Program-made: the position numbers and the translations under genes | The notes under the pieces: model-generated | Seen by the model: only the letters and a program-made list of their open reading frames with translations | The model's database searches: none | Told to the model about the DNA's origin: nothing | Shown: piece by piece, positions 61,533-62,154 of the stretch | Layout: every line of letters begins with the position of its first letter | Numbering within the stretch: position 1 is the first letter of the stretch | Virus record (IMG/VR): IMGVR_UViG_3300042319_002138 | Coordinates: 124,001 to 188,000 of that record | Reading direction: 5' to 3' (one strand) | DNA length: 64,000 nt

Positions 61533-61769
61533 ATGGAACCAAAAAAACTTTTAAAAATACATAGTTTTTTATATGGTATAAATGAAATCTTAGGATATAA
61601 GGGTAATACTATTATAGAGACTGATTATATCTACGCACCATATTTACCTATGTTTATAGAAGAAGATTTTAGACCTAGGCAAGGGATTGCTTCAAGGTAT
61701 GCACGAAAAATCGTGAATAACAATTTTTATGGGAGAGTTACACTTGGAGCCGATACGCAAAATACCTAA
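61533..61769 (+). CDS. gp23 C-terminal fragment protein with N-terminal tag
   Basis: PKKLLKIHSF tag, then LGYKG...YIYAPYLPM...FRPRQGIASRYARKIVNNNFYG (gp23 C-terminus). Confidence 0.8.
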   Translation: MEPKKLLKIHSFLYGINEILGYKGNTIIETDYIYAPYLPMFIEEDFRPRQGIASRYARKIVNNNFYGRVTLGADTQNT

Positions 61770-62154
61770 ATTTAATTTTGACAATTCAATAAATTTTAAT
61801 TTTAATTCTTACACTGTTAATGCGGGTGCAAGAACAATACGTGCAACATGGTCACCCGAATTAGCACAAGATTTACAAGCATACCACGGGATAGACGCTG
61901 AGGCTGAATTAACGAGGTTATTATCTGAGGAATGGGCTAGAAGTATTGATAGAGAAATTATTAATACTCTTCTTGCTCAAGATTTAATAACCGTACAACC
62001 ATTAGGCCGACCAATCGGTCATCTTTTTTATTTCGATTCCCAATACGAAACATTCGAACCTAAAGTTTATGACGATGGTTCTTGGAGTCTAAAAAATATT
62101 TTTGAAAGTTCCATTGGTTTTAAAATAGAAATATCCCCACATAAGTTTATTTAA
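61729..62154 (+). CDS. permuted gp23 fragment protein with tags at both ends
   Basis: PIRKIPKFNF; RTIRATWSPELAQDLQAYHGIDAEAELTRLLSEE..IDREII; then AQDLITVQPLGRPIGHLFYF. Ends ISPHKFI. Confidence 0.85.
   Translation: MGELHLEPIRKIPKFNFDNSINFNFNSYTVNAGARTIRATWSPELAQDLQAYHGIDAEAELTRLLSEEWARSIDREIINTLLAQDLITVQPLGRPIGHLFYFDSQYETFEPKVYDDGSWSLKNIFESSIGFKIEISPHKFI

What the first reader, a model, noticed from the sequence alone, without database searches (positions are those of the whole stretch)
61533..62154. Second locus of tagged capsid fragments, with permuted gp23 segments
ORF 61533 is tag + gp23 C-terminal 60 aa, with the TP..DP loop deleted. ORF 61729 is tag + the highly conserved ELAQDL..HGIDAEAEL...IDREII block, followed by the VQP..P.G..FY block that normally lies far upstream in gp23, and then a second degenerate tag (ISPHKF). 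The out-of-order segments rule out a simply truncated or frameshifted capsid gene. The locus is 30 kb from the first cluster, so the architecture recurs. Together the two loci cover most conserved gp23 motifs.
Basis: partly seen in the sequence, partly recalled or inferred. Interest (0 to 1): 0.85.

Follow-up and report, generated by a model that had tools for sequence, protein, structure and literature searches.

The report
Small shuffled capsid-protein mimic genes
A freshwater T4-like phage that has a normal major capsid gene elsewhere also carries two small, coupled genes built from rearranged pieces of that capsid protein plus a short shared end-motif; the larger one is conserved and under selection, its function is unknown, and I found no published description of it.

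Summary
ORF1 (61533-61769, 78 aa) is an N-terminal motif plus the gp23 C-terminal block, with a 6-residue deletion. ORF2 most likely starts at TTG 61744 (136 aa), not ATG 61729. It carries gp23 profile positions 355-416 and then 84-116, so the order really is permuted.

- **Not an artefact.** Independent lake metagenomes contain the locus without differences.
- **Not the capsid gene in pieces.** The phage's 226-kb contig encodes an intact 599-aa gp23. The fragments are only 45-59% identical to it.
- **ORF2 is a real gene.** It belongs to a phage-only family (96 clusters at 90% identity; dN/dS 0.15-0.4). Longer relatives keep the same permuted order and carry the motif at the start, in the middle and at the end.
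- **ORF1 is less certain.** It is lost in several relatives and weakly constrained.
- **The shared motif is real.** A motif matrix built from a relative's first-cluster tags ranks the ORF2 N-terminus 6th and the ORF1 N-terminus 15th of 61,008 window positions.

The function is inferred, not shown. I favour capsid-interface mimics that dock on gp23 or the prohead. The main rivals are decoys for host capsid sensors or EF-Tu, and interference with competing phages. I found no cultured-phage homologue and no published description.

The parts
61533..61769 (+). ORF1: a 78-aa mini-gp23 made of an N-terminal tag plus the gp23 C-terminal block
   Evidence: ORF list. Pfam Gp23 E=9e-7. Custom gp23 profile positions 531-589, 66 bits, with a 6-residue gap. 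Orthologues at 68-100% identity in L086-L093 and L002, and a weaker one in L103 (38%). An 88-aa counterpart without the deletion sits next to an ORF2-type gene in a distant phage, L333. dN/dS 0.4-1.5.
61536..61568 (+). N-terminal tag of ORF1 (EPKKLLKIHSF)
   Evidence: Rank 15 of 61,008 six-frame positions with a motif matrix built only from the first-cluster tags of relative L227.
61587..61745 (+). gp23 C-terminal block in ORF1 (residues 19-71)
   Evidence: Alignment to the custom gp23 profile, positions 531-589. The segment equivalent to profile 'qLtPti' is missing. tblastn to the Mel-JY01 capsid protein, residues 475-538.
61744..62154 (+). ORF2: a 136-aa mini-gp23 with a probable TTG start (the mechanical ORF starts at ATG 61729)
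   Evidence: Family of 96 clusters, nearly all 130-147 aa and covering 96% of the query. Homologues begin at the MEP motif with ATG, GTG or TTG. GGAG at 61732-61735. dN/dS 0.15-0.4.
61747..61779 (+). N-terminal tag of ORF2 (EPIRKIPKFNF); this stretch is also read in the ORF1 frame as the ORF1 C-terminus
   Evidence: Rank 6 of 61,008 positions, the best hit outside the first cluster. In the family alignment M1, P3, I7, F10 and F12 are at least 90% conserved, with synonymous codon variation.
61786..61971 (+). ORF2 block 1: gp23 I-domain linker 2 plus spine helix (profile 355-416; T4 gp23 residues 244-311)
   Evidence: Structural names come from PMC9546572. AlphaFold predicts helices only at residues 38-48 and 52-79.
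61966..62064 (+). ORF2 block 2: end of the gp23 N-arm plus I-domain linker 1 (profile 84-116; T4 gp23 residues about 99-133, which overlap the Gol region)
   Evidence: Second domain hit: 24.6 bits and 12.6 bits to T4 gp23. tblastn to Mel-JY01 capsid protein residues 70-118.
62065..62151 (+). Family-specific C-terminal extension (P.VY.DGSWS..N.FE..IG), ending in a weak tag (EISPHKFI, 62128-62151)
   Evidence: Nearly invariant columns in A3 and A4. About 27 clusters at 50% identity carry the whole module in an exhaustive search. The tag score ranks 237 of 61,008.
60624..61529 (+). Conserved upstream neighbour: a 301-aa protein whose C-terminal part looks like a PD-(D/E)XK nuclease
   Evidence: It precedes the ORF2-type gene in all 18 IMG/VR loci that carry one. 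There is no Pfam, PHROG or PADLOC hit. ESM Atlas neighbours include RE_MjaI, Mrr_cat and RE_TaqI clusters; this is a lead only.
59085..60612 (+). Two tandem Mom-like genes that open the same gene run
   Evidence: PHROG 1384, Mom-like, E=1e-31 and 2e-40. A Mom-like gene also lies just upstream of the ORF1/ORF2-type pair in distant L333.
28635..29658 (+). First cluster, part 1: three small ORFs (28635-29036, 29036-29329, 29329-29658), each ending in the tag P-I-K-K/Y-I-x-K-F/H-x-L
   Evidence: Translations. ORF 28635 matches gp23 profile 23-82 (33 bits) and ORF 29329 matches 553-589 (19 bits). The same ORFs and tags are present in relative L227.
30461..31095 (+). First cluster, part 2: ORF 30461-30775 (N-terminal tag plus gp23 profile 447-487) and ORF 30781-31095 (gp23 profile 18-92 plus C-terminal tag)
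   Evidence: The ORF 30781 family has 18 clusters, and its tag KKDGLTPYNYVKKHKL is almost invariant. The L227 homologue of ORF 30461 starts MEPKKYIKKHHL.

Best explanation
**What it is (well supported).** ORF1 and ORF2 are two separate, translationally coupled small genes. They belong to a phage-only multigene family of 'mini-gp23' proteins, built from old, shuffled segments of a T4-type major capsid protein. The segments are framed by a short basic-aromatic motif, roughly E-P-x-K/R-K-I/Y-x-K-H/F-x-F/L, which can sit at the N-terminus, the C-terminus or between blocks. The phage builds its head from a separate, intact 599-aa gp23.

**Architecture of ORF2.** It keeps I-domain linker 2 plus the spine helix, followed by the end of the N-arm plus I-domain linker 1. 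The two linkers are the T4 equivalent of the HK97 E-loop. The I domain, the A domain and most of the P-domain sheet are absent. This amounts to a circular permutation of the capsomer-contact subdomain, with its new ends placed where the I domain used to be.

**How it most likely works (inferred, about 0.4).** The proteins do not fold on their own. They probably act as interface mimics that dock by strand and helix complementation onto unassembled gp23 or the prohead, with the terminal motif as a second docking or targeting peptide. On this reading they are accessory modulators or minor components of head assembly.

**ORF1.** It is the younger-looking or more weakly constrained partner and may be decaying in this lineage.
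For: **Identity and architecture.**

**Own intact gp23.** It lies on the contig that also carries the window sequence. A second contig, of 380 kb, carries both a full gp23 and an ORF2 variant.

**A real gene under selection.** 96 clusters; dN/dS 0.15-0.4; conserved gene order.

**Same permuted order in distant, longer relatives.** Proteins of 160-225 aa carry a fuller N-arm block (FPIVRRV...) and an internal copy of the motif.

**Motif shared between the two loci.**

**No autonomous fold.** Mean pLDDT 47 with an 86-sequence alignment; only the spine helix is predicted.

**The retained elements are contact elements.**
- In T4, the linkers that ORF2 retains make intra- and inter-capsomer contacts.
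- The spine helix carries the gp31-bypass positions.
- The His282/Met284 and Met98 residues that anchor the portal whisker fall inside or right beside the two retained blocks (PMC9546572).

**Hints of prohead or virion association.**
- ORF 30781 keeps the gp23 N-terminal region, including the stretch aligned to the profile's '..LLnE' segment. I equate that segment with the gp23 maturation site from my own knowledge of T4.
- Some long relatives end in arginine-rich tails.
- Phage DnaJ and FKBP genes lie 6-8 kb upstream.
Against: - No binding, expression-timing or virion data exist.
- The genes sit among DNA-modification, nuclease and other accessory genes, not in the head module.
- ORF1 is dispensable in several relatives, and one ORF2 variant lacks the spine helix. 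This fits an arms-race accessory gene as well as an assembly factor.
- A fragment carrying the most conserved gp23 contacts could poison the phage's own assembly.
- RNA evidence is one 217-nt contig at 96% identity in one metatranscriptome, which may be DNA carry-over.
Confidence: 0.4

Rival explanations
1. Counter-defence decoy or shield. The mini-proteins display the most conserved gp23 epitopes, including the Gol-like EF-Tu-binding segment. They occupy host factors that read out the capsid protein, such as Lit-like proteases, Avs7/Dsr1, CapRel, or EF-Tu itself. Alternatively they cover these epitopes on nascent gp23 so that sensors are not triggered.
For: - The genes lie in an accessory region next to Mom-like DNA-modification genes.
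- Their distribution is patchy, with gain and loss of ORF1, loss of a block, and different mosaics in unrelated phages.
- ORF2 block 2 aligns with T4 gp23 residues 99-133. This lies in the first quarter of gp23. There a 29-residue Gol segment binds EF-Tu and is reported as the most conserved part of gp23 (PMC3014915).
- Many defence systems sense the capsid protein, in one case together with EF-Tu.
- The family is absent from bacterial genomes.
Against: - Known capsid sensors are activated by binding, and the Gol peptide alone activates Lit. A mimic would therefore be expected to trigger rather than block.
- I found no precedent in the papers searched.
- There are no PADLOC hits nearby apart from a DruA-like gene 33 kb away.
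- Gene order is stable over large divergence, which is less typical of fast arms-race genes.
Confidence: 0.2
2. Inter-phage interference. The fragments act as dominant-negative capsid poisons against co-infecting T4-like competitors, whose gp23 shares these universal motifs.
For: - The retained blocks are those nearly invariant across 80 gp23 sequences.
- The fragments are not closest to the phage's own gp23.
- The proteins are predicted not to fold alone.
Against: - The phage's own gp23 carries the same motifs, so self-poisoning would have to be avoided in some way.
- There is no evidence of early expression or of specificity.
Confidence: 0.1
3. Adaptors for the neighbouring modification enzymes. 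The gp23-like pieces or the tags tether Mom-like enzymes (or, in other phages, glycosyltransferases) to the capsid protein or prohead.
For: - The run Mom-like gene, ORF1-type, ORF2-type is kept in the window, in close relatives and in distant L333.
- Other mini-gp23 genes sit inside glycosyltransferase and methyltransferase operons.
Against: - Adjacency may only reflect conserved genome layout.
- Another mini-gp23 context, L226, has neither enzyme type.
- There are no fusion proteins and no interaction data.
Confidence: 0.1
4. Non-functional debris of an old capsid-gene duplicate (for example a decayed gp24-like paralogue), or a single gene broken by a frameshift.
For: - ORF1 has dN/dS of 0.4-1.5 and is missing from L094-L102.
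- ORF1 and ORF2 overlap in different frames.
Against: - ORF2 shows purifying selection, with 96 clusters of conserved length and ends.
- ORF2 stands alone with its own start codon where ORF1 is absent.
- The segment order is permuted in the same way in relatives at 40-55% identity.
- Joining the frames would need a +1 shift, and no recognisable shift site is present (reading).
Confidence: 0.05

Closest known systems
T4-type major capsid protein gp23 and vertex protein gp24 (Pfam PF07068, HK97-like fold)
   Same: The sequence homology is clear. It covers the gp23 C-terminal block (ORF1) and the linker 2/spine-helix and N-arm/linker 1 blocks (ORF2).
   Different: - The proteins are 78 and 136 aa, against about 520-600 aa for gp23.
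- The I domain, the A domain and most of the P-domain sheet are missing.
- The segment order in ORF2 is permuted.
- The genes lie outside the head module.
- The phage has a separate intact gp23.
- They cannot be shell subunits.
Gol peptide of T4 gp23 (the EF-Tu-binding trigger of the Lit protease)
   Same: It is a short stretch of gp23 that has biological activity on its own. ORF2 block 2 aligns with T4 gp23 residues 99-133. This overlaps the Gol region as I remember its coordinates (about 93-122). PMC3014915 places Gol in the first quarter of gp23 and calls it the most conserved part.
   Different: Gol is part of the capsid protein itself, not a separate gene. Whether ORF2 binds EF-Tu is unknown.
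Capsid-targeting sequence of T4 internal proteins, and cargo-loading peptides of encapsulins
   Same: Both are short terminal peptides of about 10 residues, shared by otherwise different small proteins, in a system built on an HK97-fold shell. This comparison rests on my own knowledge.
   Different: - There is no sequence similarity.
- Here the motif also occurs at C-termini and internally.
- The window's ORF1 and ORF2 lack a clear L/I-x-E protease site after the motif.
- Packaging has not been shown.
Capsid-assembly redirecting proteins of satellites (P4 Sid, SaPI CpmA/CpmB, PLE TcaP)
   Same: They are small accessory proteins that act by binding the helper phage's capsid protein lattice. This comparison rests on my own knowledge.
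   Different: Those proteins are not derived from the capsid protein and are encoded by satellites, not by the phage itself.

Membership tests
Major capsid protein gp23/gp24 (PF07068) | Significant sequence match to the family profile | tested here: met
   Pfam E=9e-7 for ORF1 and 4e-22 for ORF2, both above the gathering score. Custom profile: 66 bits for ORF1, and 93 plus 25 bits for ORF2.
Major capsid protein gp23/gp24 (PF07068) | Colinear coverage of the whole HK97-like core (N-arm, linkers, spine helix, P-domain sheet, A domain) | tested here: not met
   ORF1 covers 59 of 598 profile positions. ORF2 covers 62 plus 33 positions in reversed order. All tagged ORFs in the window together leave positions 117-354, 417-446 and 488-530 uncovered.
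Major capsid protein gp23/gp24 (PF07068) | It is the phage's shell-forming gene | tested here: not met
   A separate intact 599-aa gp23 (820 bits, profile 1-596) lies on the same 226-kb contig. Shell formation itself is not testable here.
Gol-type EF-Tu-binding element | Homology to the Gol region of T4 gp23 | tested here: inconclusive
   ORF2 family residues 70-104 align with T4 gp23 precursor residues 99-133 at only 12.6 bits; the custom profile gives 24.6 bits. The exact Gol coordinates come from memory.
Gol-type EF-Tu-binding element | Binds EF-Tu domains II-III | not testable with these tools
   This needs a binding assay or a multimer prediction.
Capsid-targeting or cargo-loading peptide | The same short terminal peptide on several otherwise different proteins of one phage | tested here: met
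   Tags occur on seven tagged ORFs in the window. A matrix built from relative L227's tags ranks the ORF2 and ORF1 N-termini 6th and 15th of 61,008 positions.
Capsid-targeting or cargo-loading peptide | Prohead-protease site (L/I-x-E) directly after the peptide | tested here: inconclusive
   The window's ORF2 has F-N-F-D and the family consensus is F-C-F-E. In long relatives the internal motif is often followed by L/F-x-E. The cleavage rule is from my knowledge of T4.
Capsid-targeting or cargo-loading peptide | Protein present in proheads or virions | not testable with these tools
   No virion proteome exists for this uncultured phage.
Pseudogene or gene remnant | No purifying selection; not conserved as an ORF | tested here: not met
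   For ORF2: dN/dS 0.15-0.4 in 28 pairs, and 96 clusters with conserved ends. For ORF1 the test is inconclusive: dN/dS 0.4-1.5 in six pairs, and the gene is absent from L094-L102.
Programmed-frameshift fusion gene | The downstream frame lacks its own start, and a shift site is conserved | tested here: not met
   ORF2 has its own TTG, GTG or ATG start with an upstream GGAG, and it stands alone where ORF1 is missing.

The most novel reading that the evidence does not exclude
The mini-gp23 proteins are phage-encoded mimics of the capsid-protein 'pattern' that bacterial immunity reads. They would be decoys or shields that bind EF-Tu and/or capsid sensors (Lit-like, Avs7/Dsr1, CapRel-like), or that mask nascent gp23. 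The shared terminal motif would control their docking or their turnover. To my knowledge no such pattern mimic has been described for a structural phage protein.
Probability: 0.15. Interest if true: 0.9.

Novelty: new variant of a known kind. Interest (0 to 1): 0.65.

Why it matters
The major capsid protein is the most conserved protein of T4-like phages and a frequent trigger of bacterial immunity. This family shows that a phage lineage has taken that protein apart, kept only its capsomer-contact and EF-Tu-binding segments, re-joined them in a new order and attached a common terminal peptide. It has then kept the products under selection for a long time.

Whichever function proves correct, it would add a new class of small phage proteins. 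The candidates are an assembly modulator, a prohead-targeted component, a sensor decoy and a weapon against competing phages. It would also add a new short peptide 'address', and both are directly testable.

The family also affects g23-based diversity surveys and automated annotation. These genes are labelled 'Gp23 domain' or 'major capsid protein (fragment)' although they are not capsid genes.

Tried and rejected
1. **Split capsid gene: rejected.**
   - The window, the 8 kb beyond its end and the 6 kb before its start hold no full gp23.
   - A clade-specific peptide pattern then found an intact gp23 on the same 226-kb contig.
2. **Assembly chimera: rejected**.
3. **Tag as a DNA signal (late promoter or translation enhancer): not supported.**
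   - TATAAATA is not enriched in the window: 26 sites against 20 ± 4.6 expected.
   - N-terminal tags lack it, and conserved residues show synonymous codon variation.
   - Tag DNA is, however, very similar between the window and L227, so an RNA- or DNA-level constraint is not fully excluded.
4. **Tag as a sliding-clamp-binding tail: set aside.** This phage's sigma factor and the ORF before it end in acidic/hydrophobic tails of a different type (the comparison is from memory).
5. **Tag derived from gp23: not supported.** The tag matrix finds nothing in about 190 gp23 sequences. A matrix of the gp23 N-terminus does not find the tags.
6. **Short profile HMMs of the ORF2 tags:** they had no power to find the first-cluster tags.
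7. **AlphaFold of the ORF2 family:** confidence was low, so no fold search was run.
8. **Promoter and terminator scan:** results were at chance level, so expression timing is undetermined.
9. **Cultured relatives:** no cultured phage has a mini copy. There were 2,199 matching places in 2,197 records, none covering 80% or more of ORF2.
10. **Bacterial genomes:** only one weak partial match.
11. **Druantia paper:** I read it for a capsid link to the DruA-like neighbour of the first cluster and found none.

Full report
**Setting.** The window is about 30% G+C, and nearly all genes are on the + strand. It is part of a T4-like myovirus from lake water.
- It starts in the baseplate wedge module.
- It carries Mre11/Rad50-type genes, a sigma-70-family factor, SIR2, DnaJ, FKBP, RNase HII and two Mom-like genes.
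- Five IMG/VR contigs of 96-226 kb are 100% identical at protein level across the finding.

**Observation.** ORF1 (61533-61769) and ORF2 (mechanically 61729-62154) exist as described.
- Both pass the Pfam Gp23 gathering score.
- I built a profile from 80 full-length gp23 sequences taken from IMG/VR. With it, ORF1 matches positions 531-589 with a 6-residue gap.
- ORF2 matches positions 355-416 and then positions 84-116. The order is therefore genuinely permuted.
- tblastn with the Microcystis phage Mel-JY01 capsid protein gives the same picture.
- The ORF2 family profile hits T4 gp23 at precursor residues 244-311 and, more weakly, 99-133.
- In the terms of the T4 head structure paper (PMC9546572), block 1 is I-domain linker 2 plus the spine helix. 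By its position, block 2 is the end of the N-terminal arm plus I-domain linker 1.
- The two linkers are the T4 equivalent of the HK97 E-loop. The I domain between them is missing.

**Start of ORF2.**
- Homologues begin M-E/N-P-x-K-K-I-P-x-F with ATG, GTG or TTG.
- In the window a GGAG lies 8 nt before TTG 61744.
- The protein is therefore most likely 136 aa, and the overlap with ORF1 is 26 nt.
- Where ORF1 is absent, ORF2 follows the upstream gene directly with its own start. The two are separate genes, and no frameshift is needed.

**Not an artefact.**
- At least 24 lake-water runs hold 75-100% of the sampled words of this region.
- Contigs of three of these runs cover the ORF1/ORF2 junction without a single difference.
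- One metatranscriptome has a 217-nt contig (61686-61902, 96% identity) across the junction. This is weak evidence of transcription in a close relative.

**Not the capsid gene in pieces.**
- No full gp23 lies in the window or its near flanks.
- Tetranucleotide similarity pointed to one gp23-bearing contig as a near relative.
- A peptide specific to that gp23 clade was back-translated and scanned. It hit the 226-kb contig that also carries the window sequence.
- There it lies in an intact 599-aa gp23 that matches the profile end to end at 820 bits.
- A 380-kb contig carries both a full gp23 and an ORF2 variant.
- The fragments are 45-59% identical to the phage's own gp23, which ranks only 5th to 87th among about 170 gp23 sequences for the pieces it matches, and gives no hit for ORF 30461. 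The pieces are old, not recent copies.

**A gene family under selection.**
- ORF2 has 96 relatives (clusters at 90% identity) of about the same length, down to about 50% identity.
- The ends are conserved, as is a family-specific C-terminal module, P.VY.DGSWS..N.FE..IG...EIK.H.FI.
- Pairwise dN/dS is 0.15-0.4.
- An exhaustive profile search of 1.84 billion representatives finds about 27 clusters at 50% identity that carry the whole C-terminal module.
- Several of these are 160-225 aa and have the same permuted order. They also carry a fuller N-arm block (FPIVRRV...), an internal copy of the motif between the two blocks and, in some, arginine-rich tails.
- One variant lacks the spine helix.
- No cultured phage in the collection searched has such a gene, and bacterial genomes gave only one weak partial match.
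- ORF1 is less secure. Its dN/dS is 0.4-1.5, and it is missing from L094-L102.
- However, an 88-aa ORF1-type gene without the deletion sits directly before an ORF2-type gene, right after a Mom-like gene, in a distant phage. The pair is therefore old.

**The tag.**
- In the first cluster (28.2-32.3 kb) the ORFs at 28635, 29036, 29329 and 30781 end in P-I/Y-K/N-K/Y-I/V-x-K-F/H-x-L. ORF 30461 begins with the same motif.
- A relative at roughly 60-70% identity keeps all of them. Its ORF 30461 homologue starts MEPKKYIKKHHL, which matches the C-terminal tags and resembles the N-termini of ORF1 and ORF2.
- I built a matrix from that relative's five tags and scanned all six frames of the window (61,008 positions). 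The five orthologous tags come first. The ORF2 N-terminus ranks 6th and the ORF1 N-terminus 15th.
- The ORF2 C-terminus ranks 237th.
- In the ORF 30781 family the tag is the most conserved part of the protein.
- The tag is not found in gp23 itself.

**Other mosaics.**
- In another phage group two adjacent genes share an N-terminal domain of about 80 aa. One adds the spine-helix block. The other adds the N-arm/VQP block, then the C-terminal block, then the N-terminal block of gp23.
- In a third group a 97-117-aa mini-gp23 sits inside a glycosyltransferase and methyltransferase operon.
- Shuffled gp23 segments have therefore been recruited repeatedly.

**Mechanism.** Nothing here shows function. 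The evidence is as follows.
- AlphaFold with 86 sequences predicts only the spine helix, at mean pLDDT 47. This fits a protein that folds on a partner.
- The retained segments make intra- and inter-capsomer contacts in T4, carry the gp31-bypass positions, and contain or lie beside the portal-whisker contact residues.
- Block 2 overlaps the EF-Tu-binding Gol region.

I therefore favour interface mimicry, and within it docking on the phage's own gp23 or prohead. The first-cluster members keep the gp23 N-terminal region. The shared terminal peptide also recalls capsid-targeting peptides.

The genomic context, among Mom-like, nuclease-like and other accessory genes, and the gain and loss pattern keep other readings open. 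A decoy or shield against capsid-sensing immunity and interference with competing phages both remain possible.

**Novelty.** I found no description of such genes in the papers searched. Databases label them only 'hypothetical' or 'Gp23 domain-containing'.

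Noticed in passing
window 27089-28240: A phage gene with a DruA (Druantia type I component) domain: Pfam E=5e-15, PADLOC DruA E=6e-9. It lies just upstream of the first tagged cluster and is conserved in relative L227. It could be a defence-component mimic.
   Followed up: partly
window 53652-54584 and 55858-56271: The phage encodes a full DnaJ (J domain, zinc-finger and C-terminal domains) and an FKBP-type prolyl isomerase, 6-8 kb upstream of the finding. FKBP and SIR2 genes also neighbour an ORF2-type gene in L332.
   Followed up: partly
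window 36070-37312: A sigma-70-family factor (regions 1.2, 2 and 4) ends in ..NLFEFVQK. The 140-aa ORF before it ends in ..SDLIFGKKTK. These tails recall the clamp-binding C-termini of T4 late-transcription proteins; this comparison is from memory and was not tested.
   Followed up: no
window 58824-59013: A strong terminator-like hairpin (58824-58844, followed by a T run) is followed by TATAAATA at 59006, 72 nt before the first Mom-like gene. This may be the start of the transcription unit that contains ORF1 and ORF2. TATAAATA is not enriched in the window overall.
   Followed up: partly
window 60624, 62479, 47523, 44264 (N-termini): Several unrelated ORFs start with a similar motif, ..(I/V)RK(I/V)L(K/R)E... 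The gene after 62479 repeats that ORF's first 34 residues at 47% identity (seen in L086-L091). This may be a second recurrent N-terminal motif in this phage.
   Followed up: no
window 61811-62238: One contig of run X11 joins 61811 to 62238, skipping 426 nt, which is nearly all of ORF2. Only 21 letters lie on the shorter side, so it may be a chance or foreign match. If real, part of the population lacks ORF2.
   Followed up: no
L226:8001-9172: Two adjacent genes in another phage share an N-terminal domain of about 80 aa that starts MKKLIH.YL. They carry different gp23 blocks; the 250-aa protein has N-arm/VQP, then C-terminal, then N-terminal gp23 segments.
   Followed up: partly
L004:5863-6216, L005:10001-10354, L225:8001-8294: Mini-gp23 genes of 97-117 aa are embedded in operons of glycosyltransferases, methyltransferases and an epimerase. 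The phages concerned also carry glutamine synthetase and thymidylate synthase genes.
   Followed up: no
window 31092-31313 and 31712-32302; L332:5391-5945: Further small ORFs without a detectable gp23 block end in or contain tag-like strings (..IEPTMTNLNFNFGK, ..SKLIHKF; in L332 ..GVLRHRFAT.., ..VTKHQLT..). The tag may mark a wider set of proteins than the gp23 fragments.
   Followed up: no
window 32302-32892: A 196-aa ORF contains a long low-complexity run of EVIKE/VEVIKEV-type repeats. It is conserved in L227.
   Followed up: no
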